A stretch of 64,000 nt of DNA from Adineta vaga (GCA_021613535.1 CP075494.1:13454001-13518000), one strand, 5' to 3'; counted from the first letter of the stretch, positions 8,831-53,850 are shown. The notes: generated from the letters alone by a model not told the origin. Program-made: numbers and translations.

Positions 8831-10669
8831 ATGGATCCAGATACTTATGGTGGTTCATTATCAAATGCTCTTCCTTCATCGTCATCGCATACAATTAGTA
8901 ATGAAACACGTTCATCATCTCGTCGCCATCAACATCATCATAAGAAACGAACAAATGATGGTACAATAACAATAGCACCTATTGCAACATCAACAGATAG
9001 TCAAGATGAACGTATTGAAGTTAAAATTCTTCCACAAGATGATAATTGGGGTGAAACAACAACGATTACTTGCAATGGTGGAAATGAAGATACATTAACC
9101 AATAATAATGATACAAGTTTACAATTGAATGAAAATAATCATCATGATCATTTACATGTCTTATCAAATAATCTTAACCGACGAACATTATCTTTAACAA
9201 TATCACAATTCGCTATCTATCTACTGTGTTTAATTGCTTTCATTACACCAATATTCTTTCTAACATTACCCTATACATTAGTAACATCAGATTCAATTTA
9301 TATCGAAGATTATTCGCCAATCTTAACAATTATTTTTAAACTTATTTTTTTACTCATGGGAACCTTTCTCTTATTATATCGACGTCGAAATAATACGTAT
9401 CTACCACGTATTCATCTACAAAAGACATGTCTAATATTTGTACTCTTATTTGTCCTTATTGTCTATTGGTTTTATTATATCTTTAAAATCTTACAACCAA
9501 AATTCGATTCTTACGAACGAGTTTTAACATTAACATCTACATATGAAGATTTACTTTTATTCATCTTGATTCTATCTATATTAATCGTAGAAGTGAAATG
9601 GTTATATCCAAAATGGATTGTTAAAGTTGTACGATCTCCTGATGGCCAAACAAGACAATATACAATTGGTAATAGATGATTGCTCATATATTTTGAAATA
9701 TTTCGTTTTCTTTTAAGGCTCAATGTCAATTCAAGAAGCAAGTGTTTATCTCATCGAACAATACTATAAAGATTTTCCTGTATTTAATCCCTGGTTGGAA
9801 AATGCTCAACAAACGCAAGGAAAACGTCACGGAGCATATTCAGCAAAATCAACTGGTTCACAATCCAATGCATCGACAGTTGTTGGAAATGGTTTAGATG
9901 GAACTATGGCACGATCAATGCGTGGCTTTAACGATAGGTAACATCATCATATTATTGATATTCGTGAGAGTATGAAATGAATAATGATATCGTATTTTAG
10001 ATTCTACGATGAACTTGATTATGAACGTCGTGTTCGTAAGAGACATATGAAATTATTAAGTTCGTGTGAAGATGCTTTTACACATGTTCGAAAATGTCTC
10101 AATGAAAAATATGGTTCCCATATACCAATGGATGCTCGAGAAGCAGCACAAGTAATTATTATGATTTTCTTTTATATTCTTCAAAAAATCAATTTGTTTT
10201 CTAGGCTGTATTTTCTTCAATGTCACGTTCTCTTCAAAAATATCTTCGATTAACTCGTCAACAACCTTATTTTACTCGTGAATCAATTATTTCTCATTTA
10301 TCAACATGTTTATCACATGATCTTTCTCCTCGAGCATTTCTTGAACGTTATGTTCAAACAGAATCCCAACCATTAGCAACATTACTTTTTCCTGCTCTTG
10401 CCTCGGTTACAAATAATCATCAAGAACAAACCTGGACATTGATTTGTGATCCTCAAACTGCAACAAATAATGAAGAAAGACAAGAAAAAGTTTCAATTAA
10501 TCAATCTATCTATCCAAATTTAACATTCGTCCTCAAACAACCACATGCAGAACATATTGCTTTGATATGTACATTTCATCAAATGCCACGAGTGAATTTA
10601 ATCGAAAAAATCTTCGATTCTAAACATAATAAGTTTGTTTTGAAATTAAATTCAGAAACATCTGTTTAA
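8831..10669 (+). CDS. Vang: Vang-like/Strabismus planar cell polarity protein, 4 coding exons
   Basis: ERIEVKILPQDDNWGETTT, four hydrophobic helices, VVRSPDGQTRQY, SIQEA..Y.KDFPVFNPWL, FYDELDYERRVRKR, MDAREAAQ, LQKYLR.TRQQP, and a C-terminal LNSETSV PDZ-binding motif. Confidence 0.95.
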
Positions 10670-10973: not shown

Positions 10974-11999
10974 CTATTTGTTTTCATTTTTATCAGAATA
11001 AAATTGCAGAGCAACTCCATTGATACAATAGCGCATATAAGTAGGTTGTGGACCATCATCAAATACATGACCCAAATGAGCTTTACACTAAAATAGAATG
11101 ACAAAGATTTAGTTTTCTGATCATTTCCAATTAACAAATACGAACTTTTGAACAATGTACTTCTGTTCGAATCATTCCATACTTTTCATCAGTATGTGTT
11201 GCTACATTTTCTTCAATTTTTGATTGATAAAATGATGGCCATCCTGTACCACTATTGTATTTATGCTTTGAACTATTTGAGATCTTTTCATAAACAAACA
11301 AAGCTTCGAAATTTTATCAATTACCTGAATAATGTAGAATTACACACCGCACAAGTATATATACCTGATTGTTTATTTGTATATAATTCACTTGTAAATG
11401 CCTGAAATAAGATGAAAGTTATTATTGAAATCAATAAACATAAATTTACCTCTTCAGTACCACTTAATTGTGTTACTTTATACGCTAATAAACTTAGTTT
11501 ATCAATATTATGATACCATGAAGCTATTACAATATGAATACTTATGAATATATTTTATTAGAACATAAAACTTACGAGTTTCAATGACATTAATAATCAA
11601 ATGTTTTGCTTGTTTTTCTTTTTGCTCCGTAACTGGTACAGTTAGATCACCGATATAAGTTAAATTATTTTGACCTGTTAGAATTCTTGCGGAAAGCGTG
11701 TAAGTATTATGTGGATTGATTTCTGCCAATGGATATTTGAGTTTAAAGGGAAAATTAAACGATGAAACGGTGCGATTTGTATAAAGTTTGATTTTTATTC
11801 TTGCTATCGAGCGAGGACGATCATTACGAGTAAGACGAAGTTCAACTAATAAATGAGCATTTTTATCTCCATTTGGTAATGAACCATTTCCACGAACTTC
11901 ACCACGAATAATTGCATGAGTCAATCGTTTCGATGAGGAGATTGTTAGATGAAAAGAGAAAGTAATGAAAACATATACGAATAATTGATGATATTTCAT
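10974..11999 (-). CDS. Secreted fusion: signal peptide + YbaY/YscW-like domain + methionine-R-sulfoxide reductase B (MsrB/SelR), 5 exons
   Basis: Introns 11575-11524 and 11449-11402, plus two more, keep the frame. MsrB part: [47 protein letters not shown]...[36 protein letters not shown]-terminal part: [24 protein letters not shown]...LTYIGD..VPV, which resembles YbaY. Confidence 0.85.
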
Positions 12000-14095: not shown

Positions 14096-16231
14096 TTAGT
14101 GACAGTATTTATGACCATGTAGTATAGCATCGGCAGCACCACTAATTGTATTATCAACTGTAATATTAGTAAATCGATTTAAATAATTCTTCAGATAAGT
14201 TTCTGGTTGAAAGTTTTCATCAGGTGGACATTGTTGAAGGCTAAGCCAACGTTTCATATAATGAGACATAAGTTCCATTGGACCTAGAGCAAAACCATCA
14301 TCGATACCTGGAAAATATCGATGGGGTGGTACAAGTATCGTTGTATTTACATTCAAAATTCCTTCACGTTCAAAGCTTATTGGCATTTTAACTAATGTAT
14401 CAACACGAGTACGAATCAATAATTGATAACGAATATTAAATTTTTTTTCATATTCCTTCACAAGATCGTAACATTCATTAAGTGACCATAATTGTTGGAA
14501 ATAAGCAGGTACAGGTATAAGAGCATGATGAGGAAGTTGAAATTGAGCATTACAAGTAGAAGGAATACCAGGATCAATGATTCGATCTTCATAAAGAATA
14601 GTTACAGTCGAATTCATATATAAACGTGCTTGTTTAAGACGTGTATGTAGCGGAACAGGTCCTTGTTTGAATGATGAAGAGAGAAAAAGAAATGTATCGA
14701 TATCTCCACGAATTCGTCGACGAAGATTTATATGAGTAGTAGACCAAGCTTCCGGAACACATTCAGCAATACCAGTTACACATACAGCTGCACGTTTCTC
14801 TTTCGGCGCAGGGCGAGGAGAAGAAGAAGAAGAAGGAGGAGGAGCAGCAGCAGCAGCAGCAGAAGGAGATGATGCTACGATTGATGGAAATTTATAACCA
14901 ACAGAACGAAGATCATCAAGCCACGCATCCGTTATTTCCACTTCTTTCCATTTCCAAAATCCACCTTGACTTATGGCTCTTGCTAATTCACGAATTCTTC
15001 CAACTAACGAAGGATTTGATGATGACCATGATGCAAGAAAACGAACAAATGAAGCAGATTGATGATATAACTGATATTCATCATCCATATCTTCGATATA
15101 TGAATGACTATTTCGTATTTGCTGAACAGTTGATCGACCAAAAATTAAATGACCACCAATATCCCACAGAAGACGTTGGACCCAATATCCTCGCCAGATA
15201 TCACAAACACGAAATGTCGTTGTGACAGGAAGATATAAACCCCAGAATGCTTCATAGTATGTGACAGTATTTTGTGTATTGTATGGAGAAAATGTAAATG
15301 ATTCGAGAGCGATGGGTGGTTGATCACGATCGAATTGAACACGACCAATAGTCATTGGATGAGCCAAACGATACTATAAACAAACAAATAAATAAATGTA
15401 AGAGAGTTCTTTCTCAATACATAGTGAACAACTTACAATGGCATCAACATCAGGATCAAGATCAGCGAGATATTGTTGAATATAGGCATGTGTAATGTTT
15501 TGTTGATTCTGTCGAAGTGAATGCCATCCATCTTCGGTAAGATTTCTCAATTGATCAATAGGAAAACCTCGTGGCCAAATGTGTGGATGACCGAATGATG
15601 CATAAATATTGACAAAAAGTGATCGTTGTCGATGAAATGCAAACCAAGGAAGATGTTTTGGTTGTAGAAGTTTTGGTAGAAGATAAATATCATTGTTTTC
15701 GAGAAGATTATCATCATCTGATTCGAAAATAATTTGTGCACCACATTGAATAGCAATGAGATAGCCGAGATTTTTTCTTGCATAAGATCCTTGAGGTAGA
15801 AATTGTAGAATACGAAAGTGAAGAGAATGTTGTTGTTGTTGTTGAAGAGAAAGAAAGAGAAGACGAGAAGTGTTGTGAGAATTGAGATGTTTGAGCCAAT
15901 GAGTTGGTGTTTTTCGATCAGCAATAATGATAAGATTCCAAGGTGTAGTGAGATTGAGAAATTTGTAAATGGCTTGTGTTGGATAATGAATAGTTGTGAT
16001 AACAATCCATTTATCTCCTCGTATTGGACATACATATGTAGATGATTGTTTAGTATTCCACAATGAGAAAGATGATAAGTCAGAATCCGCACGTAACAAA
16101 AATAATTTTTCGACATTTTTATCAGAAAATAACTTGATCATTAATAAAAGAAAGATGGCACACATAATAATTAACAGAAGACTATTTTTGGAGCGAACCA
16201 TGATCTTAAAAAAGTAAATAAATTTTCCCAT
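14096..16231 (-). CDS. STELLO/DUF288-type putative glycosyltransferase fused to a second GT-like domain; type II membrane; one intron (15436-15374)
   Basis: KWIVITTIHYPT, IADRKTP, SYARKNLGYLIAIQCGAQIIFESDDDN, NIYASFG..IWPRGFP, IQQYLADLDPDVDAIYRL, FSPYNTQNT, LPVTTTFRVCDIWRGYWVQRLLW. After a Ser/Ala/Pro linker: RAAVCVTG...QQLWSLNECY...YQLLIRTRVD...GIDDGFALG...PETYL. The start may be 16201 instead. Confidence 0.85.
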
Positions 16232-16801
16232 TTGTTTAGCTAATGGAAAAGAATCTCTTATTTTAAAACATTTCAAGTTTAGTTCTTCTAGTCTTCTTGA
16301 AAATGTGAGTATAACTACTGATGATGACTAGGATTTAGATTAAGAATATAATTATAGATACATATCTAAATAGAACGACCGGGTATGCAATTCGATGGAA
16401 AAAATCGAAAAGAATAAATTCTACATTTCAAGAATATCTCGATGATTAATTCTGTTTTATAATGCCACGACTAAAAGTCCAAATAACTACACTTACTATG
16501 ACATATGTAGACAAGAAAGTTTTATTGAGAAATATCGTCGACGAATTGCATTGTATAAAAATCTGTATATGAAAAAATCACTTATTACATAAAAAATACC
16601 ATCTCATATGTTCTAGCATTGCTAATCGAAGAAGTGTATGTAATAGTCATAAAATCTTATACAGACTACTTACATAGTTAATCGACTTTTAATGATCATA
16701 TAGAATAATAATTAACAGGGTCCATATGAAAAGAAGGGAAAACGAATATGTATATAGCGCCATTTTCGATTATATGACTTATTATTCATTTATATTTTAC
16801 A

Positions 16802-18055
16802 ATGATCGATGAATGTTCCTTTCGTAGATATAATATTGACCAAAAGTTTGTATTCAAATTTCGATTCACTCTTAGTTATCGACGTTTATCACTTTGTATA
16901 ACTACATTTATATTCATATTTTTCTTATGGTTAAGTTATACTTCAACAGCAAACTATAAAAACAATGAAAAAGTAAAATTACTTCCAAAAAATTCAATGC
17001 CAACATTAGCTCGTGTTCTCTATTTATTTCTATGCGAAAATCAAGTTGAAATTGATACATATATGCAAATATTTCCAAGTATATCTGCAGATGCAGTATT
17101 CTATTGTTGGCGAGAAAACTGTAATTCATCTCGTTTTCGTTCTTCGAAACATATTTATGTCAATACATGGTCAAGTGAAACAAAAAGAAATGAAAAATTA
17201 ATATCTCTTGAGTCAATCTCAACTTATTACTATGTTCAATCTCGTATATTTATTATCAATGAAAAACAATTGAAAATCAAAGAAAAATTAACCTGGACAA
17301 CAGCACGAAATCAATTATATGAATTAGCTTTGAATGAAGAACGTAAACAAAACTGGCGATGGGCATATTATAATTTTGCTGATGGTGATGTTCATACTGC
17401 ATGTCCATTAGCAGATCAATTATTAACAAATAAAACAATTGTTGATTATGGAAAAAATGAAGAATATTTATTTGCGTCACATTTTTATTCATTTATAAGT
17501 TTAACTACGATGATAAGTGGAGAAGAAAAATGTTTTTTACTTTTTGATGCCTTTCTTCTTTCGATTTCACCAGCTATTGCAACTATATCAGGAACAAGTG
17601 GTCCTATGGCATATTCAGGACTTTTAACACAAATTGTTTATCATATTGATGCTATGTTTAATGCAATACACCGAGATGCATTACAATTTCTACTTCCATA
17701 TTGTCCAAGATATGATAGACGAAGTTGGTGGACAAGTCAAGCTATATTTGTCTATCGTTCATTATGTTTATATGGACATATTATCACCTTCGATGGTATT
17801 CACATCGTTCAACAAAATCATCGTTTATATCCTCGTATTGGTGATCCGTGGACAATGGATGACGACATGAATTTAGTTCCTAATTATCTACTTCCTCTAA
17901 AGCATTATATGAAACAATCCCGTTTTGTTAGTCCTTTAGTTTTACATCACTACGCAGGATGGAATCTTCGACTAGCAAGTGAAACATGTCGATATAATCA
18001 TACAGCTATGACAATTGATACATGCCTTGTACATGGTAATAATGTACCGAAATAG
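16802..18055 (+). CDS. Intronless type II membrane protein, putative GT-A-fold glycosyltransferase
   Basis: 417-aa ORF with an N-terminal TM anchor, TWTTARNQLY...YYNFADGD (DxD after a hydrophobic strand) and IDAMFNAIHRDA..LLPY...SWWTSQ. Confidence 0.65.
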   Translation: MIDECSFRRYNIDQKFVFKFRFTLSYRRLSLCITTFIFIFFLWLSYTSTANYKNNEKVKLLPKNSMPTLARVLYLFLCENQVEIDTYMQIFPSISADAVFYCWRENCNSSRFRSSKHIYVNTWSSETKRNEKLISLESISTYYYVQSRIFIINEKQLKIKEKLTWTTARNQLYELALNEERKQNWRWAYYNFADGDVHTACPLADQLLTNKTIVDYGKNEEYLFASHFYSFISLTTMISGEEKCFLLFDAFLLSISPAIATISGTSGPMAYSGLLTQIVYHIDAMFNAIHRDALQFLLPYCPRYDRRSWWTSQAIFVYRSLCLYGHIITFDGIHIVQQNHRLYPRIGDPWTMDDDMNLVPNYLLPLKHYMKQSRFVSPLVLHHYAGWNLRLASETCRYNHTAMTIDTCLVHGNNVPK

Positions 18056-18319: not shown

Positions 18320-20327
18320 TTAATTGTATCTTCCACCACTTTGTGGCCCACCACGTGGATATACTTCTTGTCGACCTGTTCCACCATAGTTTGAACCGCT
18401 GCCATATGCATTTTGATTGACTGATCGATCATTTCCATATCTACCACCTCTTTCTTCTATTGTTTGACTGTATCGTGGCTTGAAATCAGGAAAATCTGTT
18501 TTCACACCACCAACGAATCGATTCTTCTTCGAATCATAAGTAGGAGCTGGTTGAGCAGATGCACCACCAGCAACACCAGCTGGAACTGGACCAGCAGCTA
18601 AAAACAATAAAATCAATCATCACATTCATCCATCAAAATACAATCTCTTCTCGTCATCTCGTACCTGGGACAGGTTGAACAAGTGGAGCAACATTCACAT
18701 TTGGTGGAGGAGGTGCACCCGAACTAACCAACGATGCATAACCCCATTTAATCAATTGAGCAACAGCAAAACGATGACCATAGAAGTTGATCAATGGTGG
18801 TAGAATATAGACTAAATTCAATACATGCACTTTCTCGATTAATCAAACTCATGATACTTACTACCACCAGTAGGTGAAAAAATGAATGTTTGATAAGTAA
18901 TTTTGTCATAGAAGATTGGAAGCCATGGAAAGATCGAAATGAGTGGTGGAAAGTTTCCTAACGAAAAGAAACGAGAAAAGATATGAGATAATGATAGATA
19001 TGACATGTAAGTAGTATACGGTGAGGAAATTTGCGAACATCTTTGTATTGACGAACAGGAAACTCGACACGTGAATATGAACGTTTGTTTTGATCATCTT
19101 TGCCGTTGTAATCTCGGTTTCTGCCATTGTAATCTCTGCCTTTGTCGTTGTAATCTCGGTTTCTGCCGTTGTAGTCTTTGTTTTTGTTATATTTGCTTCC
19201 ACCATATTTCTTGCGATTTCTTGTACTTTCCCAATCATCAGCAGCGCGAATCCAAACTGTCATCGATGCATACATATCTTCTTGATCGCTATACACAGGT
19301 CCGAAATCACCAACATCTTGTCCATATTCGCCCGGATGAACTCCATCACGACCAATAACTTCATATCGACTGTTGTCATATTCATCACTTCCATCATAAT
19401 TGTTGTCGTAACGTCCACCATAACGATTCTTACCATATCTGTCATTTTTTTTCGGATATTTATCCTGTTATGCATATCGAAAAATGAAATGAAATGAATA
19501 TTTTGGGTGAAGAACTTACTTCTTTGGGTTCATCTAAAAGAATACAGAGAAGAAGAAGAAGAAGGTGATGATGAGAATGGAATGAAAAGTGAAGTAGACT
19601 TACATGGTACGTGTGGATAATAATTGGTTGTTGTTGTTGTGAGTGGTCGTCTTGTTGATCGAGCTAATGTGATGAAAGTATAAATAAGATGAAAAGATGG
19701 TGAAGGGAAGAGAAACTTACATGTTGCCGGACGACGCGATGTCCATGTGGGATGATCCGTAGTAGGTGGACGACGCGATGTCCATGTAGGGTGATCCGTA
19801 GTGGGTGGACGACGCGATGTCCATGTGGGATGATCCGTGGTAGGTGGACGACGCGATGTCCATGTGGGATGATCCGTGGTAAGTGGACGACGAGTTATCC
19901 ATGTGGGATGATCCGTGGTAGGTGGACGACGAGTTATCCATGTGGGATGATCCGTGGTAGGTGGACGACGCGATGTCCATGTGGGATGATCCGTGGTAGG
20001 TGGACGACGCGATGTCCATGTGGGATGATCCGTGGTAGGTGGACGACGCGATGTCCATGTGGGATGATCCGTGGTAGGTGGACGACGAGTTATCCATGTG
20101 GAATGATTCGCAGTAGATGGATGGTCTGTAGTTGGTTTTCGATTTTCGAAAAATCGATCGGCTCTAAACGCTTCATTTTCCACTTCCTCTTCGTTGTCTG
20201 GTTGTGCTGATCCTTTTGAAAGAACAAAAAGCAACAAAATCGTGCTGTTCAAGAAAACAATCTATGGAAGAAGAAAAAGAGATCGTTGCGAAATACATTG
20301 AATCATTCATACTTTTCGACGCATCAT
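18320..20327 (-). CDS. Secreted low-complexity Thr/Pro-repeat and Tyr/Gly/Lys/Arg-rich protein, copy A
   Basis: Spliced N-terminus MMRRK|IVFLNSTILLLFVLSKGSA (signal peptide), 9x RRPPTTDHPTWTS, a Tyr/Asp/Asn-rich block, a hydrophobic core FPWLPIFYDKITYQTFIFSPTGG..YILPPLINFYG, and a Gly/Tyr tail. About 8 exons. Confidence 0.75.
18362..19720. repeat. Segmental duplication, copy 1 (pairs with 22804-24205)
   Basis: Near-identical over ~1.35 kb including introns. Differences are mainly one low-complexity block and a GAA microsatellite length. Confidence 0.95.
19728..20100 (-). repeat. 39-bp coding tandem repeat, ~9.5 copies
   Basis: Unit ggacgacgcgatgtccatgtgggatgatccgtggtaggt on +, encoding RRPPTTDHPTW(TS/IT) on -. 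Confidence 0.97.
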
Positions 20328-25752: not shown

Positions 25753-27634
25753 TTACCATAAAGATGGTGGTGGTGGTTGTTGTTGTTGTTGTTGAATTTG
25801 TTTAGCTAATTGAACAGGTGGACGAAAACGATTTGCCACATTCTAAAAATAGAAAAAAAATACAAATCAAATCGCCATGACGTTCTTTCCTACCTTTTTC
25901 TTTTTCGATTTGAGAATATTTTCATCTCTTTCAAATAATCCCATTGATCTTCCATCAATAGTTCCTTGTTCATTACGTAAAGCAGATGCAATTCGTTTGG
26001 CAGCTGTTTTATTTAAATGATGTACATCACGTAAATGTCCAGTTAAATAACGTAATTTAACTGTTGATTGACATGGTGTATGTGGAATACGTTCTTGATG
26101 TGGTAAAACAGCATTATAATTACTCAATGGACAAGATACATAAGCTGTTTCATTTAAAACTTGTTCATCAGGTCGAAATAAAATACGTTGACTACTATTT
26201 TCATTTTTCATCATGGCTTTAACTAATTTCATTGCACTAGCACGATTTAATTGATGAAATGCAAGAAAATGATCATATAAAGCAAAATCTTGTTGTTCAG
26301 TTGTTGGTGTACATAAACGAATACCATGTATGGGTCCAAGACCAAAGACATTATGTTGTGTTAATGGACATGGTGCACGAAAAAATGATGGAAGAATGGA
26401 AACAATAGAAGATTCCGTTGCCGAAAAGAATAATGTAGGATGATCATCAAGATCACCAGATGAAACAAGACGAACAATTTGCATGGAGGCAGCATAATTT
26501 AAATAATGATATTGTTTTAAATGTTCAAATAGAGATATCTGAGAATTTGATCGACGAATACAAGGAATATGACGAACTTGATGACGACGTTCAATACCAT
26601 AGGTATTCGTTGTCAATGGACAATAGTCACATTTATAGGTTTTTAATTCTCGAACCTAAATGAAAATGAAATTACGATATGTTTGTTTCAATGATATTGA
26701 TTATTTCTTACAGTTAAAGAATTGTGTGGTTGATTGATATCACTAGAATTAAATAGAAAACTTAGTTCGAAAATTTCAATCTAGAAGAATATTTACGTGT
26801 CGGGAAGTTCATCATCCGTTTCAGTGGATTTTCCAACTAAAATAATATATGAAAATCGATTTCGTTATTACGTTATGTTCGCTACTTACTATTTGAAGAT
26901 GAGGATAGATCTTGATTAGAGTACGAAGAAATTTCTACAGATAAAATAATGCTTAGTATTTCACCTCGTAAATTCCTATTTTCTTTTCTTACGTAGATCT
27001 TGTTTGATATTTGACGTTGAAAACAATCTTGAATCTAAAATAATACCCCAAAATTATTCTTCTTTCTCTCTCTGTTAATCTCGTATACTAACCACCAAAT
27101 GTTCCATACACACTTTCATCATTAAATGGAGTATTACTGGAATTGGTTGCTAAAATTCACCATCAAAATTAACGTTTTTGTTTTTATTCACAACTTTTCA
27201 TACAAACCTGTTGCTGTTTCATGTTCACCAATCAGTTGTCCAATTTTATCAATAACAGGTAGAAAAGCCGCTGTTTGTTGTAATCTTGCTAGACATGAGC
27301 GCATATTTACAAAATCATCTGGTCCAATATTGTTCATTCCCGTTGTTTTTGATTGTACATACGCATTCAATTGTCGAAAATGTTCCATTTCACTATCCAA
27401 CACTTGATTTAATTTCAATCGTTGTTCAGTTAAACGTTTATCAAATGAAGCTAATTGTGCTTGTTGTCTTCGTGCATCATCTAATAATCGTTGAAAATCA
27501 CTTGGAAATTGTTGTTGATGTTCAGCTAAATGTCTGATACAAAGAAATAACTGACAATGACGACAAATAGTAAATTGATATGCATCACATTGTGAATGTT
27601 GACATAATGAAGGAGATGATAATGTTGTAGCCAT
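25753..27634 (-). CDS. B-box-like + coiled-coil protein with three CPL..C..HxxxxH repeats (paralog of 12380-13803)
   Basis: LCQHSQC..ICRHCQLFLCIRHLAEHQ, coiled coil, several small exons, then CPLTTNTYG..PC..LFEHLKQYH, CPLTQHNVFG..LC..LYDHFLAFH and CPLSNYN..PC..LTGHLRDVH. The last exon ends QQQQQQPPPPSLW*. Confidence 0.72.
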
Positions 27635-37737: not shown

Positions 37738-38871
37738 TCAAACCCATTTGAGCGTTGTCGATTGTAATGGCATTTCTGTTAATGACCAAGATTTCGAATT
37801 TTTTTGTCGTTCAGTTATAACCATTTGTAAATAGCCAATATTTAATGAGAGAGTAAACAAATCATAAACATTAGGTTGACGTCCAACTAAATCCCATGTT
37901 AGTGTTTCAGGTGAGGTAGCATGACCAACAATAAGAATATTGAATGTTGAAGGCGAAGATGAATTACTATGTGTTTGTTCAATTTGACGAATAATAAATT
38001 TCGAACGAAGATAATAAGCACTTTCACGTTCCAATGGATCAATATTTTGCATAATAGGTTGATAAGATAGATCAACATTAATACCATAATTATACCAATC
38101 AATGGGTTTGAGAAAAAAACTCATACCAAATCGTGCTGCACCTAATTCTAATAGGCCAGGTTCAATACGAATTGATAGCTTATTTTCTAAACCAAGACCT
38201 TTCAATATTTGATACGTCGTAAAAATGCATCGCATAGCTGGTGAAGAATAAACATAAGCTGGTTCAAATTGATTCAATCCAAGTACTCGACCAACATTTT
38301 GTGCAGCATTTAAACCATCACGTGTTAATGGTGTATCAAGTGCCCAAAAATATTTATTTGGACGTGATGGTAATTCTGGTGGATAATTTATATGATACGG
38401 TCGATATTGCCCTAGATGATCGAAGGCTAGCATAAACCAATTTGAACCAAAATATCGATCGACTCGTTCACCATGTCGTATAATAAAAAATCGCATATCA
38501 CAACCATCAGGCAATGATTGACCTTGCGAAAATAATTGTTCATGCGAGCAATGATGATGTTGGTGTTGATGATGACGATACTGATGTTGATAAATATCCT
38601 TTTCATAATACTCGGATGGTGGTTGTATTAATGATTCAGAACGTGATGGAGCTCGTGGATAAATATATCGAGTGAGAGTTTTTTTTCTCGATAATGTTTT
38701 AGATTTATGTCGTGAACGAACAGTACAATTAAGAGATTCAGTTGATTTAATTGGTATTCGAACTGTTGATGAAGCTGATTTTATAAATACATGGCGTTTA
38801 ATTGTTCCACAGCCTAAATCCAAATCTTCATCTATATGAAGTGAATCTGTATCATCACCTGTCTTGGTCAT
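37738..38871 (-). CDS. Histidine phosphatase (phosphoglycerate-mutase superfamily), UBASH3/Sts-like domain
   Basis: FFIIRHGERVD, DTPLTRDG, VYSSPAMRCIFT, IRIEPGLLE, ILIVGHA; single long ORF. Confidence 0.88.
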   Translation of the reverse strand: MTKTGDDTDSLHIDEDLDLGCGTIKRHVFIKSASSTVRIPIKSTESLNCTVRSRHKSKTLSRKKTLTRYIYPRAPSRSESLIQPPSEYYEKDIYQHQYRHHQHQHHHCSHEQLFSQGQSLPDGCDMRFFIIRHGERVDRYFGSNWFMLAFDHLGQYRPYHINYPPELPSRPNKYFWALDTPLTRDGLNAAQNVGRVLGLNQFEPAYVYSSPAMRCIFTTYQILKGLGLENKLSIRIEPGLLELGAARFGMSFFLKPIDWYNYGINVDLSYQPIMQNIDPLERESAYYLRSKFIIRQIEQTHSNSSSPSTFNILIVGHATSPETLTWDLVGRQPNVYDLFTLSLNIGYLQMVITERQKNSKSWSLTEMPLQSTTLKWV

Positions 38872-39183
38872 TGTCACTTTCTTTTTCTTCTAGTAGATCA
38901 AATAGTCGTATCAAGCTTATGCCTTGACTACTCTTCTTCTTCTTCTTCTCTCTCGTTCGTTTATTTCTATATACACATCAAAACACCTATATCTACGTCA
39001 AGCATGGCCTCTCTTCTTTCTGATTTCGATAAAGCAGACAGGTTTGAATAAGAGCGAAGGTTGTCTCTATTACTATTTCATGGTCAGATACAATAGATAT
39101 AGTTTATGATATATTCCCCTTTCTTTCTTTTTTTTTCTTATATGAATGTCTGCAAGTTTTTTTTTTCTTCTTCTTCTTCTTCT

Positions 39184-40086
39184 TCAAACAGAGGCCATAA
39201 TAGGTCGCATGTACCACGTGCGATCTGTTGCATTACGTTCAATAACAAGTGTATGAAGAAAACCGATGTTGCCGCATTGTTGTCCAAATACTTCAGCATT
39301 GAATGGTTGTCGAAAAGCCATATGTTGAAAGACTAATGGTGTTGCTGCATGACCAACAATAAGTACATTGGAACGTCGTCCTCGATTAAATCCACGACCC
39401 ATACCTGGTACTCCGCCTCCATGACGTCGTTCAATTGTCTGAAAAAATTGTTGACTTCGATTATAGAAATCATATTCTGTTTCTAGTGGATTCAAATAAT
39501 CATTAAGACGATGATAATGTCGATCGACATTGTAACCAGCTTGTAACCAATCACGTGATGACATAAATGGTGAAATTGTTTCTAACATTTGTAAAGGTTG
39601 ATTCCAACCCATCGGCTCGAATAGATAAGGTTCAAGACGAATTGGAATAGAAGATCGATTCATTCCTTCTAGGACACCATTTGCTGTAAGAACACTTCGA
39701 CATGCAGGTGAAGAATAACAATGATCAATTCCAATACCGTATCTAGCTAATTCTTGTCCTTTCATATACGATTTCTGTTCACCATTTCTTGTTATTGGTG
39801 GATCGAACACATAGAGTAAAGTATTTATACGATGTGGTAGTGATTGTGGTAAAATAGCATGTTGATAACTTTGTGGTGGTGCTGATGGTACACCACCAAA
39901 AACATGATCATACCAATTTTCACCTAAAGCTAAATCAACACGTTCTGCATGTCGAAGAATAATTAAACGAAGATCATAGGTTTGACCGGGGTTATTCGCA
40001 CGTTTATCATATCTTTTGTAAAATTTTTTCTTTCGATGATAATTTACATTATCATTAAGATATACAGGAGGTTTGATCACAAACAT
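39184..40086 (-). CDS. Second UBASH3/Sts-like histidine phosphatase (tandem paralog)
   Basis: IILRHAERVD, DPPITRNG, YSSPACRSVLT, IRLEPYLFE, VLIVGHA; intronless. Confidence 0.88.
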   Translation of the reverse strand: MFVIKPPVYLNDNVNYHRKKKFYKRYDKRANNPGQTYDLRLIILRHAERVDLALGENWYDHVFGGVPSAPPQSYQHAILPQSLPHRINTLLYVFDPPITRNGEQKSYMKGQELARYGIGIDHCYSSPACRSVLTANGVLEGMNRSSIPIRLEPYLFEPMGWNQPLQMLETISPFMSSRDWLQAGYNVDRHYHRLNDYLNPLETEYDFYNRSQQFFQTIERRHGGGVPGMGRGFNRGRRSNVLIVGHAATPLVFQHMAFRQPFNAEVFGQQCGNIGFLHTLVIERNATDRTWYMRPIMASV

Positions 40087-40867
40087 CAAAATATGTAAAT
40101 GTAACAGGTACACTCTTGTCTGAGAAGAAGCGGAGAAGAAGGAATGAAAAGAACAAGAAATAATAATCGAAGGTGAGCGATCATGCGTGCTAAACAAAAG
40201 AGGAGACGTCGGATAGGTATCATATTCATATGATCATCAAATAAATAACTTGTAATCATCTAAAATCATATGAAAAAAGTGACATCAAGGTTCATTAATC
40301 TTTTTAGCCTTGTATATCCATTTGATAAACATAGTTAAATATAATTTATCATGAAAAATTTCATTCTTTACCTCTCCATCATTCTTTTCTATCTATGCAT
40401 AATAATAAGAAAATGAAGAAGAAAAAAAAATAGCTCTTCAATGACAAATATATATTAATTGATTGGCTTACATATCGGTACGAGGACATCAATGTTGTTG
40501 TTATTATTATCATTCAAAGATATAAACAGCAACAACATCAAATGAAATGGCCTCATTAAACCGTCATAGAAAACTTAAGTATATAAATTATATTTTTCCA
40601 TTTAAACGACTATTTCATCAAGTTATATGGTAGATACGCCTTACACATCGTTACGTATATATATTCAACGAAAGTGTATTGAAATCAATAAAAGATTTTA
40701 TGACTCTATCATTGTTACGGAATGATCATCAATGAAATCAAATACAAGAGAAAAAGACGCGCTTCATCAATTTTTCTATCGTTTTCATCATGTTTTTTCT
40801 TCTTCTTCACAATATGATCTATTTAAATACAGAATAATCTAAATGTTTATGAATATTTGTTCTGAAT

Positions 40868-49784: not shown

Positions 49785-52144
49785 ATAGTTGATATATTAT
49801 ACATAAAAAGTTTTCCATTCATGTTTTTCCTATTTTTTTATGCACAAAAAAAGCCTAATAAAACGATGCTTATTTTCAGCAATAAATGCATGAAAGATGC
49901 CTCCTCTTCTTCTTTTTTTTCTTTATATTATAAGAAACGAGAAAATAAGCGATAATTGAATCTGTTTTCTTCTATCTTCCCAAGAAATCTCTTTCTGTTC
50001 GGATTGATTGATATGTCATATCTTCGTTCCAATATATAATTTCTCAAGAGAATTAACTACTAAAAATAAAGAATCTATTATTGATGAAGAGGATTGTTTA
50101 TTGACAGAATATACTATTGATAACTTTGATCATCATCACATCTGTCTTTGTCATGCTAGATGTCTGAATGAAGAAGAACTTTCGCTGTTAATTCAATCTC
50201 AAAGACGATAAGAACATATTTACATATCGAGATATATATGTATATATATTTCTTTGACGATTATGATCATCGAAACCCGACTGACATTAGATCTACAAGT
50301 AACAACATTACAATTGCTGTCAATTTTTTCCAACCAAGTCAATGACAAAGACATGTATGTATAAAATTCGAAAGGTTCAGATTACTTAATCTTGAATGTC
50401 AATATAAAAATCTTTTTCATTCATCAAATCTTTCGTCTTGATATAATGAAGAAAGAAAGAAGGAAAGAAAGAGAAGAAAAAAAAATACTCAAATTCAATC
50501 AAGCTTTATTTCGATTGTATTGAATTTTTCTTTTGATCTATTAACAGAGCAAAAACAATCTATAATATATTTAATCTTCAAAGTGCTTGCATTCATTGAT
50601 GCTAAGTGTGCATTCTCTTTGTTTTCCACGATGAAAGAAAAGGAAAAAAAATATTGAATTGATATAATGAAAGTCAGATTTCATTTGTTGGTGTGTTTAT
50701 AGTGCGACTCTGACCTCATTGTTGTTGTTGTTGTAGTTTTTCTTCGTAATTCTTATCTTCTCAATTTCCTTAACAGAAGTTAGAAGTATCGTATTTTAAG
50801 TCTCATTTTTATATCTATTTCGTTTTGTTTTCGACATAGTTATGCAAGTTGGTAATAATATGAAGAAATTCTTCTGAATGGATTGAGAAGACCGATTAGT
50901 GCGTGATTATCACGCAGGTATTGCATGTATAAAAGCAAGAAAGAAAATGACACATATTTTGTTCGTTATTTCTAACTTATTGGATTCTTTTCTTTAACAT
51001 ATATTTTTCTTTTCTCTAATTCTCTCCTAAAAATACAAATACATGTAACGATTTTCTTTCTTTCTTTCTTTTTCTTCTATACAAAAAACATAATGAAAAT
51101 AATAACAACAACATCTCAGACAAAAACATTTCTCTGCAAATATAAGAAGATCATGCTCATTTTTTTTCTTCTCTTCAATTCACTTTATACCTCATTTCCT
51201 TCTCTATTCGATTCATCAAACAACACACATGCACAGTTTTTCTTTCTCTTCGTTCTCTTCGAGTGACAATAACAACAACAGAAAACTAGAGTCGCATGCG
51301 TTCAGTATAGAAAACGAAGAATTATTTTTGTCGTCATCGTTTCCATCGTTTATGTATCTAAGTAATGGGTGTGCACTACATTTTGAAAGGCTGATGATGA
51401 TGATGATGATGTTGATGATGATTGAAATAAAGAAAGGAGAGAAGAGACGAGAGAAAAAAGAGTTTTGTTATGTATATATAAAGGACATTTATAAACAAAT
51501 AATGTATTTCAGTGCAAAGAGTTGATTCTTTAAGACATGGAATTGGAATCTTGTATATCCTCATCGAATTGATTTGAAAGAGAAAGAAAAGAGTAAGTTA
51601 TTTATTAATTATCAACGGGAAATAGCCTATTAATATTTAATAAAAGTAATAAAAAAGAAAAATGAGAAAGAGATTTTTCTTTTCTATTTCATTCTTCTAA
51701 TCAATAAAGAAAAACGTGATTGAAAAGATTTTTTCTTCCTTCCTCTGAACTCTTACCTATTCTCTCGTACTCACACTTTCAATATTATTTTATCTCAACA
51801 AATTTCATATTTCAAAGGTTTCAGTACATATATTTGCATATATCGAAATAATAAGAATTCTCAATAGATATACGAAAGAAAAACATACTCGAATTTCTCA
51901 ATGAAAGTATTCATTGATATTTCGTTCACTTTCACAAAATCTGCAAGCGATAAACCACTTAAGATTTGACATATCCGATACATTTTGCGTGACAGAAATT
52001 TCGCTTTTACTTAAGAAACTCAAATGTCACTAGCTGTCATATTCTTCTGACGTCTTTCCTTTTGTGATTGTTCATGATTTTTCTTCTTCATTCCTATACT
52101 CTGTTATTTTTAGTGTTGTTCAATTCATTTATCGAAATTTTCAC

Positions 52145-53850
52145 ATGGCTTCGATTCGTTCGATTAACTCAGCTAAACCGCCTGATCGGTTATTAAATTC
52201 ACGAGTTGCACGAGCATCATCTTCTATTGCATCCCTTTCTCCTAAAAAACTTAGTCTCACAAAAACAACTCCCATTGCTGTAGCAACTACAAAACGAAGA
52301 AAATCTTCCCGAATGTCTTCGAAAAAAACTTTATCAACATCAAAAACATCCCCAGGTCGTCTTGATTTATCATCAACTTTTCCTAGTACTACTACTACTA
52401 CTACTACTACATCACAATCAGATGAAATAGTCAATAAAATGGCATCGACAACAATCAATGATATTCCTAGTCCTAGCAACACCGATTTACTCAGTGCAAC
52501 TTCAACAGCATCCACTATGTTCGAATTCGACAATAGCCTACTAGATAATAGACCAAGTGAAGAACCTCAGTACGATCTTTCTGCTTCAGCTAATCTAAAT
52601 GAAACAATTACATCGACGTCATCTTCAAGAAAGTCTTCAACACAAGATATACAATTTACAATCAATTCATTCGATATTATTCGAACAGTTGGCACGGGTA
52701 CGATTTGTTTTGTTTTTCAATTCAAAATACAAAATATTCTATTTTGATCATGTGTATATAGGAACATTCGGTCGAGTACAACTTGTTTGTCATCGAGAAA
52801 CAAATACATTCTATGCACTAAAACTAATGAGTATACGACAAGTTGTCGAATCAAAACAAGTTGAACATGTTCGAAATGAAAAAAAGATTCTTACAATGAC
52901 TGATCATCCATTTCTTGTACGTCTTCAATGGACAACACATACCAATAGTCTTCTATATCTTCTCTTCGAATATCTACCAGGTGGTGAACTTTTTCAAATG
53001 ATGAGAAAACGCGAAAAATTTGATCCAAAAATAGGAATATTCTATGCAAGTGAAGTTTTACTTGCACTCGATTATCTTCATCATTTAGATATACTTTATC
53101 GAGATTTAAAACCAGTATGTTTTATGGTTTAATTATTTCTCAACTTTTTTATTCTATTAATTCTTAGGAAAACATTATATTGGACATTGAAGGTCATATT
53201 CGTCTGGTCGATTTTGGTTTCGCTAAACAAACTAAAGAACGAACATTCACCCTTTGTGGTACTGTTGATTATCTTGCTCCAGGTTTATTTCATAATTCAA
53301 TTCATCATTCTTTTCTTTTTAAAACATCCTTCCTTTATTTCATAGAAGTTATTCAAAATCGTGGTCATCATAAAGCATCTGATTGGTGGGCATTCGGTAT
53401 ACTAATCTATGAAATGCTTGCTGGTAATGATTTATTATCGAAGGGAAAAAAGAATTGAACTTTAAACAAAAATTTTTTTGTTAATTTCTAGGTTATCCAC
53501 CATTCTATGATAGTGATCAATTTGCAGCATATCAAAAGATTCTTTCAGGCAAAATCGTATTTCCTCGCCATTTCGATTATGCTGCAAAACAACTTCTTCG
53601 TAAATTATTGAATACGGATCAATCTCAACGAATTGGTTCGGCGAAAAATGGTGGTGATGAAATTAAACGTGAACAGTGGTTTGTGGGTATTTCATGGAAT
53701 GATGTTTATGATCGAAAAGTAGAACCACCAATAAAACCTGTAGTTACATCACCAGGTGATGCAACGAATTTCGATTCATACGATGAATGTGACATGAAAC
53801 AATTACCAGCAGCAGCAAGATATGAAGTGCAACTATTTAAAGATTTCTAA
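52145..53850 (+). CDS. PRKX: cAMP-dependent kinase catalytic subunit, PRKX/PKA-C3-like, with Ser/Thr-rich N-terminal extension
   Basis: [78 protein letters not shown]-terminal FKDF. Confidence 0.88.

What the first reader, a model, noticed from the sequence alone, without database searches (positions are those of the whole stretch)
10974..11999. Secreted YbaY/YscW-MsrB fusion: a candidate extracellular protein-oxidation repair enzyme built on a bacterial envelope domain
Seen: the ORF track shows only fragments, but four short in-frame introns join a signal peptide, a ~115-aa beta-rich domain and a complete MsrB. The MsrB keeps both Zn CxxC pairs (CAVC, CSKC), GWPSF, HLGHVF and the catalytic RYCIN. 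The usual resolving-Cys position is Thr (SGTGWPSF). There is no lipobox Cys and no KDEL-type end (...DKNENK*). Known: YbaY/YscW are bacterial lipoprotein/pilotin-like domains, and animal MsrBs are cytosolic, mitochondrial or ER-retained. Inference: a horizontally acquired domain was fused to MsrB to target Met-sulfoxide repair to the secretory or extracellular space, which would suit a desiccation- and radiation-tolerant animal. I know of no description of this architecture.
Basis: partly seen in the sequence, partly recalled or inferred. Interest (0 to 1): 0.88.

Follow-up and report, generated by a model that had tools for sequence, protein, structure and literature searches.

The report
Secreted pilotin-domain MsrB fusion in bdelloids
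The gene is real: a bdelloid-rotifer protein that joins a signal peptide, a bacterial-type "pilotin" beta-domain and a methionine-sulfoxide repair enzyme; it is conserved across bdelloids, and its sequence is already public but unstudied.

Summary
On the minus strand, 10974-11999 holds a five-exon, 271-codon gene with four GT-AG introns of 52, 48, 52 and 58 nt. It encodes a signal peptide, a PF09619 (YscW/YbaY) beta-domain and a complete 1-Cys, zinc-type MsrB.

The window is Adineta vaga: it is 100% identical over 17 kb to CP075494.1. The exact 271-aa model is already public as UJR23256.1, "hypothetical protein". An older, mis-spliced 252-aa model (ACD88941.1 / B3G3X0) is named methionine sulfoxide reductase.

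The same fusion, with the same intron positions and the same neighbours (a STELLO-like glycosyltransferase and Strabismus), occurs in Adineta steineri and four Rotaria species. A Philodina roseola CDS crosses the exon 1/2 junction, and many metagenome fragments carry exon 1. I found it nowhere outside rotifers. Both halves are under purifying selection.

An AlphaFold model of the N-terminal domain best matches bacterial secretin pilotins (5wec, 2yjl). The rotifer domain has no cysteine and is strongly basic (pI about 10).

Horizontal origin of the N-terminal domain is plausible but no donor is identifiable. The MsrB half also looks non-metazoan, so "bacterial domain grafted onto the animal's own MsrB" is not supported as stated. 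Secretion is inferred, not shown. I found no paper describing this architecture.

The parts
11931..11999 (-). Start codon and predicted cleavable signal peptide (residues 1 to about 23)
   Evidence: Short n-region, then a hydrophobic core of 11-15 residues (KD11 2.3-3.1 in all orthologs), then a small polar c-region. There is no 19-residue window of TM strength in most orthologs and no other hydrophobic segment. The region is modelled as a lone N-terminal helix. No SignalP-type tool was available.
11577..11921 (-). PF09619 (YscW/YbaY, pilotin-like) beta-domain, residues about 27-141, entirely within exon 1
   Evidence: Pfam 30.1 bits against a cut-off of 22.6. A profile of the family hits PDB 5wec at E 8.6e-26. 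The AF2 model has pLDDT 84.8 and seven strands. Foldseek top hits are 5wec (TM 0.74-0.75) and 2yjl ExsB (TM 0.64-0.68). The domain has no Cys, net charge +10 and pI 10.3.
11576..11999 (-). Exon 1 (141 codons plus 1 nt)
11524..11575 (-). Intron 1, 52 nt, GTAAGT..AG, phase 1; it joins the pilotin-like domain to MsrB
   Evidence: The same position and phase, and the same C|GTAAGT...AG|CT junction, occur in Rotaria and A. steineri and in L011. The Philodina GenBank CDS P0037 crosses this junction.
11450..11523 (-). Exon 2 (start of the MsrB fold)
   Evidence: It contains no ATG, so the MsrB exons cannot be translated on their own.
11402..11449 (-). Intron 2, 48 nt, phase 0
   Evidence: It has no in-frame stop, but the orthologous introns are 47 and 50 nt, so it is a real intron.
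11325..11401 (-). Exon 3, with the first zinc CxxC (CAVC)
11273..11324 (-). Intron 3, 52 nt, phase 2
   Evidence: This intron is absent in the divergent rotifer contig L012, where exons 3 and 4 are contiguous, which confirms the junction.
11146..11272 (-). Exon 4, with SGTGWPSF and the first Cys of the second zinc pair
   Evidence: SelR 50.0 bits on this exon alone.
11088..11145 (-). Intron 4, 58 nt, phase 0; it splits CSK|C
10974..11087 (-). Exon 5, with HLGHVF, the catalytic Cys of RYCIN (codon 11025-11027) and the stop TAG
   Evidence: SelR 46.3 bits on this exon alone.
8831..10669 (+). Downstream convergent neighbour: Strabismus/Van Gogh (a metazoan planar-polarity gene), seen as ORF fragments
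   Evidence: Pfam PF06638 at 151 and 109 bits. It is the same neighbour in Rotaria, A. steineri, L011, L012 and the A. vaga record.
14096..16276 (-). Upstream neighbour: STELLO-like glycosyltransferase
   Evidence: Pfam PF03385 at 67 bits. Synteny is conserved.

Best explanation
This is a bdelloid-specific, single-copy-locus gene for a secretory-pathway methionine-R-sulfoxide reductase. Its domain order is: a cleavable signal peptide; a cysteine-free, strongly basic beta-sandwich of the bacterial YscW/YbaY/pilotin family (PF09619); then, with almost no linker, a zinc-containing MsrB. Shown here: the gene model, both domain identities, conservation of the fusion, its intron positions and its synteny across bdelloid genera, and purifying selection on both halves. 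Inferred: the protein enters the ER and, lacking a retention signal, a TM segment or a GPI-type end, is secreted or delivered to a luminal compartment. There the MsrB reduces protein Met-R-sulfoxide through the Cys of RYCIN. The mature protein has only the four zinc cysteines and this one catalytic cysteine, so the sulfenic acid must be reduced directly by an external thiol (1-Cys mechanism). The pilotin-like domain cannot be a redox partner. Its conserved net charge of +8 to +14 suggests it tethers the enzyme to an anionic surface or client such as membrane, matrix or glycan. In evolutionary terms, the domain combination arose before the Adineta/Rotaria/Philodina split. The PF09619 module is most simply explained as bacterial in origin, but no close donor exists. 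The MsrB half also looks non-metazoan.
For: Gene model: and its identity to public P0270. Whole-protein Pfam on stored P0270: SelR 157.9 bits, YscW 27.8 bits. Fold. Fusion conserved with identical intron phases in Rotaria sp., A. steineri, L011 and L012, with synteny. dN/dS is 0.23-0.46 for exon 1 and 0.14 for exons 2-5. Only bdelloid proteins match over both domains, and the score falls from 396 to 218 bits below them. In the exhaustive phmmer search, only 26 of 1.84 billion representatives reach E<=0.001, and none of the non-rotifer ones carries SelR. Signal-peptide shape, the five-cysteine inventory and three sequons conserved in all orthologs (NGS/T, N-x-T, NST). Basic charge in 24 of 24 rotifer domains. 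The host is a genuine animal genome: spliceosomal introns, 30% GC like the rest of the window, and a flanking Strabismus gene. Precedent for an ER-targeted MsrB: human MsrB3 (PMC7475093).
Against: I examined no transcript or protein data, so the splice junctions rest on conservation, on independent public annotations and on one natural intron loss. I ran no dedicated signal-peptide or localisation predictor. No reductant for a 1-Cys MsrB is known outside the cell, so an ER or other luminal location is equally possible. In the full-length AF2 model of the Rotaria ortholog, pTM is 0.67, so the geometry between the two domains is uncertain. The charge-tether idea is pure inference. For most orthologs the YscW Pfam score sits only just above the cut-off (22.6-25.7 bits). 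Without metazoan MsrB sequences in the tree, the origin of the MsrB half is not tested rigorously.
Confidence: 0.62

Rival explanations
1. The whole fusion was acquired ready-made from a bacterium, as an exported YbaY-like-MsrB envelope protein. Only the signal peptide and the introns are rotifer innovations.
For: Both halves have prokaryotic nearest relatives. About a third (37 of 119) of the closest bacterial MsrBs are themselves exported 1-Cys enzymes with Sec, lipoprotein or Tat signals. Bacterial PF09619 domains are modular and are fused to other envelope modules such as MliC and fasciclin.
Against: I found no bacterial protein with both domains. The full-length search drops to single-domain scores straight after the bdelloids, and none of the non-rotifer PF09619 hits has SelR. 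In the MsrB tree the rotifer clade does not sit inside the exported group; its nearest rows are signal-less prokaryotic MsrBs with weak support (SH-aLRT 79-82). Search sensitivity was limited: one single-sequence phmmer run and the word index.
Confidence: 0.15
2. One reading: a horizontally acquired bacterial domain was fused to the animal's own (MsrB2/B3-type) MsrB.
For: Against solved structures, human MsrB3 scores almost as well as E. coli-type MsrB (128.8 versus 131.6 bits). MsrB3 also has a signal peptide and Ser at the resolving position (PMC7475093). The three introns lie in the MsrB half, while the PF09619 domain is a single exon.
Against: No named metazoan MsrB appears among the best 120 of 8000 scored hits (all at 148 bits or more). 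Those that carry a name or whose context I checked are bacterial. The published literature treats this gene as non-metazoan (PMC5371997). The N-terminal resolving cysteines of MsrB3 are absent.
Confidence: 0.2
3. Exon 1 and the MsrB exons are two separate genes or an annotation chimera, or the locus is bacterial contamination.
For: I inspected no transcript data here. Prokaryote-style gene callers report exon 1 as a 'standalone YbaY lipoprotein' in many metagenomes.
Against: Those standalone entries all end by reading through the GT-AAG donor (...TRK...TRR), so they are exon-1 fragments. The MsrB exons have no start codon before the first zinc motif. The junction position, phase and flanking bases are conserved in five lineages. 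Six independent public models join the two halves. Composition, introns and the metazoan neighbour exclude contamination.
Confidence: 0.03

Closest known systems
Mammalian MsrB3 (ER form, MsrB3A)
   Same: An animal MsrB with an N-terminal signal sequence for the secretory pathway, two zinc CxxC pairs, Ser or Thr instead of Cys in the G-x-GWP motif, and a catalytic Cys in RYCIN. It scores 128.8 bits against the rotifer MsrB half (PMC7475093).
   Different: MsrB3 carries an N-terminal pair of resolving cysteines that shuttle the oxidising equivalents (PMC7475093), plus an ER-retention tetrapeptide (my own knowledge). The rotifer protein has neither. Instead it carries a 115-aa pilotin-like domain.
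Bacterial PF09619 lipoproteins: secretin pilotins (YscW, ExsB 2yjl, the V. cholerae alternative pilotin 5wec) and YbaY
   Same: Sequence-profile membership and fold. The location is extracytoplasmic.
   Different: The rotifer domain has no lipobox cysteine, a eukaryotic signal peptide, strongly basic charge instead of mostly acidic, conserved N-glycosylation sequons, and fusion to an enzyme. Animals have no secretin for it to pilot.
Exported bacterial methionine sulfoxide reductases, e.g. Neisseria PilB (Trx-MsrA-MsrB), and the Sec-, Tat- and lipoprotein-signal 1-Cys MsrBs seen here (P0039, P0045, P0063, P0072)
   Same: MsrB working outside the cytoplasm, preceded by a signal and sometimes by an accessory N-terminal module (PilB from my own knowledge).
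   Different: The accessory domain of PilB is a thioredoxin-like reductant relay. The rotifer accessory domain has no cysteine and cannot relay electrons.
Bdelloid horizontally acquired genes (Gladyshev, Meselson and Arkhipova 2008; Hespeels et al. 2014)
   Same: This very MsrB gene (GenBank EU637017, protein ACD88941.1) belongs to that data set and is cited as non-metazoan (PMC5371997).
   Different: Those reports, as far as I could read them second-hand, treat it as an MsrB. The PF09619 domain and the secretory architecture are not mentioned in any paper I could search.

Membership tests
MsrB / SelR (PF01641) | Profile match over the whole domain above the curated cut-off | tested here: met
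   Exon by exon, the hits are collinear at profile positions 17-41, 43-84 and 85-115, with exons 4 and 5 each above the cut-off. Stored full-length P0270 scores 157.9 bits against a cut-off of 24.9, profile 3-115 of 116.
MsrB / SelR (PF01641) | Catalytic Cys in the RYC(I/V)N motif, plus the conserved His (HLGHVF) and Trp (GWPSF) | tested here: met
   These residues are aligned to solved MsrBs.
MsrB / SelR (PF01641) | Structural zinc site made of two CxxC pairs (zinc-type MsrB) | tested here: met
   CAVC is in exon 3 and CSK|C spans intron 4. Both are conserved in all orthologs.
MsrB / SelR (PF01641) | Resolving Cys in G-C-GWP (2-Cys subclass) | tested here: not met
   The residue is Thr, and there is no other free Cys anywhere in the mature protein. 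It therefore belongs to the 1-Cys subclass.
MsrB / SelR (PF01641) | Met-R-sulfoxide reductase activity | not testable with these tools
   This needs a recombinant enzyme assay.
YscW/YbaY pilotin-like lipoproteins (PF09619) | Profile match above the curated cut-off | tested here: met
   30.1 bits against 22.6 for exon 1. Orthologs score 22.6-27.8 bits, just above the cut-off.
YscW/YbaY pilotin-like lipoproteins (PF09619) | Beta-sandwich fold of solved members | tested here: met
   AF2 pLDDT is 84.8. Foldseek gives 5wec at E 1.7e-06 with TM 0.74-0.75, and 2yjl at E 1e-04 with TM 0.64-0.68; the next hits are generic Ig-like folds.
YscW/YbaY pilotin-like lipoproteins (PF09619) | Lipoprotein signal with a lipobox Cys | tested here: not met
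   Exon 1 has no Cys at all. The N-terminus is a eukaryote-type signal peptide.
YscW/YbaY pilotin-like lipoproteins (PF09619) | Pilotin function: binding and outer-membrane targeting of a secretin | not testable with these tools
   No secretin is expected in an animal, so the function must differ. This is inference.
Horizontally transferred gene in bdelloids | Nested within a non-metazoan clade in a supported tree, with a metazoan genomic context | tested here: inconclusive
   The metazoan context is shown. In the PF09619 tree the rotifers form one clade on a long stem (1.27 substitutions per site), with no donor resolved. The MsrB tree lacks metazoan sequences, and the nearest rows are prokaryotic with weak support.

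The most novel reading that the evidence does not exclude
Bdelloids export a methionine-sulfoxide repair enzyme. A cationic, bacterial-derived pilotin-fold domain pins it to anionic extracellular or luminal surfaces, giving these desiccation- and radiation-tolerant animals an extracellular protein-oxidation repair system with no described counterpart in other animals. This would also imply an unknown extracellular or luminal reductant for a 1-Cys MsrB.
Probability: 0.2. Interest if true: 0.75.

Novelty: new variant of a known kind. Interest (0 to 1): 0.45.

Why it matters
MsrB enzymes and ER-targeted MsrB3 are well known, and this gene's sequence has been public since 2008. What seems undescribed is the architecture: a pilotin/YbaY-fold module, otherwise a bacterial envelope building block, welded to a secreted 1-Cys MsrB. 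The fusion has been kept under purifying selection throughout the sampled bdelloid genera and was not found in any other organism. If the protein really acts outside the cell or in a secretory compartment, it would be a concrete and testable piece of the bdelloid anti-oxidation toolkit, which is thought to underlie their desiccation and radiation tolerance. It would also be a clean example of domain-level co-option of prokaryote-like parts. If it is simply an ER-lumen MsrB with a decorative domain, it is a modest lineage-specific variant.

Tried and rejected
- The 'standalone YbaY lipoprotein' hits at 55-70% identity looked like a bacterial donor. I rejected them: all end by reading through the GT-AAG donor, and where long contigs exist the MsrB exons and the Strabismus neighbour follow.
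- P0180 (162 aa on a 675-nt contig) looked like a possible spliced transcript. It is a soil-metagenome tandem partial MsrB and is irrelevant.
- I tested the idea that the rotifer MsrB descends specifically from exported bacterial MsrBs. Such enzymes are common among the nearest hits, but the tree does not place the rotifers among them.
- phmmer of exon 1 alone against the PDB found nothing. Only the profile and the fold search found the pilotins.
- NCBIfam has no model that matches exon 1.
- I found no paper for the locus tag prefix I4U23 or for A. vaga plus HGT plus methionine sulfoxide.
They were searched exon by exon by reference. Whole-protein steps used only stored public proteins that the tools returned (P0270, P0001, P0019 and others).
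- Nothing in the window or the fetched loci looked human, and no step needed referral.

Full report
**What is in the sequence**

The finding lies on the minus strand. Reading 12300-10700 in reverse complement shows an ATG at 11999-11997 and five coding blocks separated by four short introns.

| Exon | Window coordinates | Note |
|---|---|---|
| 1 | 11999-11576 | 141 codons plus one base |
| 2 | 11523-11450 | |
| 3 | 11401-11325 | |
| 4 | 11272-11146 | |
| 5 | 11087-10974 | stop TAG at 10976-10974 |

- The introns are 52, 48, 52 and 58 nt, all GT..AG, in phases 1, 0, 2 and 0.
- The five whole-codon pieces translate without stops.
- The coding length is 816 nt, which is 271 residues plus the stop.
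- Only intron 2 has a length divisible by three. It has no in-frame stop, but the orthologous introns are 47 and 50 nt, so it is a true intron.

**How I handled the spliced model**

Each was searched by reference. Exon 1 matches Pfam YscW (PF09619) at 30.1 bits against a cut-off of 22.6, over residues 32-131. Exons 3, 4 and 5 match SelR/MsrB at the collinear profile positions 17-41, 43-84 and 85-115. NCBIfam gives the same MsrB result and has nothing for exon 1. Whole-protein statements below use only stored public proteins that the tools returned.

**Identity of the window, and prior public status**

- A search with exon 1 returned UniProt B3G3X0 / GenBank ACD88941.1, 'methionine sulfoxide reductase [Adineta vaga]', 252 aa.
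- That protein equals the window's pieces except that it lacks 19 residues of exon 1 (window 11619-11675).
- The skipped stretch is one of the best-conserved strands of the domain. It contains the nearly invariant Pro122 and aligns with the bacterial family. The 2008 model is therefore most likely mis-spliced.
- The same 90% cluster also holds UJR23256.1, 'hypothetical protein I4U23_026276 [Adineta vaga]', 271 aa.
- All five exon pieces are exact, consecutive substrings of that protein, and its residues 142 (Pro) and 192 (Ser) are what the two split codons encode.
- Its locus on chromosome record CP075494.1 (assembly GCA_021613535.1) is identical to the window over all 17,026 fetched bases.

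**Is the fusion real?**

Six independent public models join the two halves: A. vaga, A. steineri, Rotaria magnacalcarata, R. sordida, and Rotaria sp. Silwood1 and Silwood2. The Philodina roseola GenBank CDS starts inside exon 1 and crosses the exon 1/2 junction.

I mapped the window's exon pieces onto four further loci: Rotaria sp. (L002), A. steineri (L004), an unnamed 2.2-Mb ENA contig (L011) and a Logan contig (L012).

- The same five blocks are present, with the same junction phases.
- Where I printed the exon 1/2 junction in full (Rotaria, A. steineri), it reads C|GTAAGT ... AG|CT, as in the window. L011 has the same position and phase with donor C|GTAGGT.
- In L012 intron 3 is absent and exons 3 and 4 are contiguous. 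This is a natural confirmation of that splice junction.
- The MsrB exons have no ATG before the first zinc motif, so they cannot be expressed alone.
- Nei-Gojobori counts, summed exon by exon, give dN/dS of 0.23-0.46 for exon 1 and 0.14 for exons 2-5 in all three pairwise comparisons. Both halves are under purifying selection.

I inspected no transcript data, and that remains the one missing piece of direct evidence.

**Genomic context**

The gene sits between a STELLO-like glycosyltransferase (14096-16276, minus strand) and a convergent Strabismus/Van Gogh gene (8831-10669, plus strand), which is a typical metazoan gene. The same three-gene order is found in Rotaria, A. steineri, L011, L012 and the A. 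vaga record. GC content is about 30% throughout the window. Contamination and assembly chimerism are excluded.

**The 'standalone YbaY' hits are not bacterial**

About thirty proteins of 145-195 aa at 53-70% identity, some labelled 'uncharacterized lipoprotein YbaY', all end in ...TRK...TRR or ...TREF. That ending is exon 1 read through the GT-AAG donor into the intron. Where flanks exist, the MsrB exons follow. They are bdelloid DNA in environmental assemblies.

**The N-terminal domain**

- An exhaustive phmmer of exon 1 against 1.84 billion representatives gave only 26 hits at E<=0.001.
- Apart from rotifers, these are bacterial-type proteins with two to five tandem PF09619 repeats. Some are fused to MliC, fasciclin or glucodextranase-B modules. 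There are also three short signal-peptide proteins. None has a SelR domain.
- The alignment with these relatives runs end to end.
- A profile of that alignment hits one solved structure, 5wec, at E 8.6e-26.
- An AlphaFold2 model has pLDDT 84.8 and pTM 0.72, with an N-terminal helix followed by seven strands.
- By Foldseek, that model is closest to 5wec, the 'alternative pilotin from the type II secretion system of Vibrio cholerae' (TM 0.74-0.75), and then to 2yjl, the P. aeruginosa T3SS secretin pilotin ExsB (TM 0.64-0.68). After those come only generic Ig-like folds.

The rotifer version differs from the bacterial ones in three ways:

- It has no cysteine, and hence no lipobox.
- It has two N-x-S/T sequons conserved in all orthologs.
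- It has a net charge of +8 to +14 and pI of about 10 in all 24 rotifer sequences, whereas most of the bacterial repeats are acidic.

**The MsrB half**

- Stored P0270 scores 157.9 bits on SelR.
- Against solved structures, the best matches are an E. coli-type MsrB (6sym, 131.6 bits) and human MsrB3 (6q9v, 128.8 bits), which are essentially tied.
- In the 5.8-billion-protein index, the best non-rotifer hits are 53-62% identical. The best 120 all score 148 bits or more, and none carries a metazoan name. The named ones are bacterial MAGs.
- Two hits I checked by context, P0039 and P0085, lie on clearly prokaryotic contigs.
- In a quick ML tree of 112 MsrB cores, the seven rotifer sequences form one clade (SH-aLRT 99). 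Their nearest rows are signal-less prokaryotic MsrBs, with weak support of 79-82.

I could not bring metazoan MsrB sequences into the tree by reference, so the origin is not rigorously tested.

**Enzyme type and mechanism**

The mature protein has exactly five cysteines in every ortholog: four for zinc and the catalytic one in RYCIN.

- Thr at the G-x-GWP position is ordinary. 110 of 112 nearest relatives have Thr or Ser (this is partly a word-index bias), and human MsrB3 has Ser.
- Human MsrB3 compensates with an N-terminal resolving cysteine pair (PMC7475093). The rotifer protein has none.
- It is therefore a strict 1-Cys MsrB, whose sulfenic acid must be reduced by an external thiol.
- The pilotin-like domain, being cysteine-free, cannot play the role that the thioredoxin-like domain plays in Neisseria PilB (my own knowledge).

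**Targeting**

- The N-terminus has a short charged start, an 11-15-residue hydrophobic core (KD11 of 2.3-3.1) and a small polar c-region.
- In most orthologs no 19-residue window reaches TM strength, and there is no other hydrophobic segment.
- The C-termini vary (...NENK...NEMK...HDRK...KELK) and never end in a KDEL-type motif.
- Three sequons are conserved in all orthologs, including NST directly after the first CxxC.

This fits a cleaved signal peptide and passage through the secretory pathway. Whether the end point is the ER lumen, a vesicle or the exterior cannot be decided here. I had no SignalP-type tool.

**Full-length fold**

An AlphaFold2 model of the stored Rotaria ortholog P0019, using a mixed alignment, has pLDDT 87.9 but pTM 0.67. 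This means two confident domains joined by a very short linker, with uncertain mutual orientation.

**Origin of the PF09619 domain**

- In a careful ML tree, the 24 rotifer domains form one clade (100/99) on a long stem of 1.27 changes per site. The bacterial repeats and the short singles lie on the other side, and no donor is resolved.
- The closest non-rotifer sequences are only 27-32% identical.
- One of them, P0175, lies on a contig where a GT..AG intron splits a potato-inhibitor-I domain. So at least one other, unidentified eukaryote also carries a secreted PF09619 domain.

Horizontal acquisition from bacteria remains the simplest reading, given the bacterial make-up of the family. It is old, predating the Adineta/Rotaria/Philodina split, and it is not proven.

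**Literature**

Searches for bdelloid or rotifer or Adineta together with MsrB or methionine sulfoxide reductase, for YscW/YbaY together with MsrB, and for the accession and locus tag, found no description of this architecture. The 2008 Science paper and the 2014 book chapter were not readable.

**Verdict**

The gene is an ancient, conserved, bdelloid-restricted variant of MsrB with a secretory signal and a cationic pilotin-fold module. Its sequence and gene model are already public, and the MsrB part has been noted before as a probable foreign gene. The fusion itself, its conservation and its likely secretory location appear undescribed. Extracellular repair and a role in desiccation tolerance are attractive but untested.

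Noticed in passing
L001:241-992 (ENA metagenome contig, 1,249 nt): An unidentified eukaryote encodes a signal peptide, a PF09619 domain and a potato-inhibitor-I domain. A GT..AG intron of about 50 nt splits the inhibitor domain. So PF09619 is not confined to bacteria and bdelloids, and here it is again fused to a secreted effector-type module. P0174 is its close relative.
   Followed up: partly
window 11619-11675 (minus strand): The 2008 public A. vaga model (ACD88941.1 / B3G3X0, 252 aa) removes these 57 nt as an intron (GT..AG, in frame). They encode a conserved strand of the domain. The later public model UJR23256.1 keeps them.
   Followed up: yes
L012:647-847: In this divergent rotifer contig (47% identity in exon 1, GC 38%), intron 3 is missing and exons 3 and 4 are fused. 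This is an intron loss or gain inside the family. Its exon-5 frame shows one stop (printed as X) near the C-terminal tail.
   Followed up: partly
window 14096-16276 (minus strand): A STELLO-like glycosyltransferase (PF03385 plus DUF7796) is the conserved upstream neighbour in every bdelloid locus I examined. This family is unusual for an animal and may be another foreign-origin gene.
   Followed up: no
P0039, P0040, P0045, P0048, P0063, P0072, P0078 and others: About a third (37 of 119) of the closest bacterial MsrBs are 1-Cys enzymes with Sec, lipoprotein or twin-arginine signals. Exported bacterial MsrBs appear common in metagenomes.
   Followed up: partly
window exon 1 compared with L004 and L002: Exon 1 of A. 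vaga is no closer to A. steineri (67%) than to Rotaria (68%). It also lacks the 8-9-residue segment after the signal peptide that carries a sequon in most orthologs. This hints at paralogy (ohnologs) or fast evolution in this copy.
   Followed up: no
P0179 (Rotaria sordida, 321 aa): This public model has an N-terminal extension of about 40 aa that replaces the start of the signal peptide. It is probably an annotation artefact from an upstream exon.
   Followed up: no
window 37738-40197 (minus strand): Two adjacent long ORFs both match histidine phosphatase superfamily branch 1 (PF00300). They look like a tandem pair.
   Followed up: no
window 16802-18055 (+), 19530-20252 (-), 25867-26616 (-), 52064-52747 (+): These long ORFs (227-417 aa) have no Pfam match. 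The one at 16802-18055 corresponds to an annotated 417-aa protein without domains in the public record.
   Followed up: no
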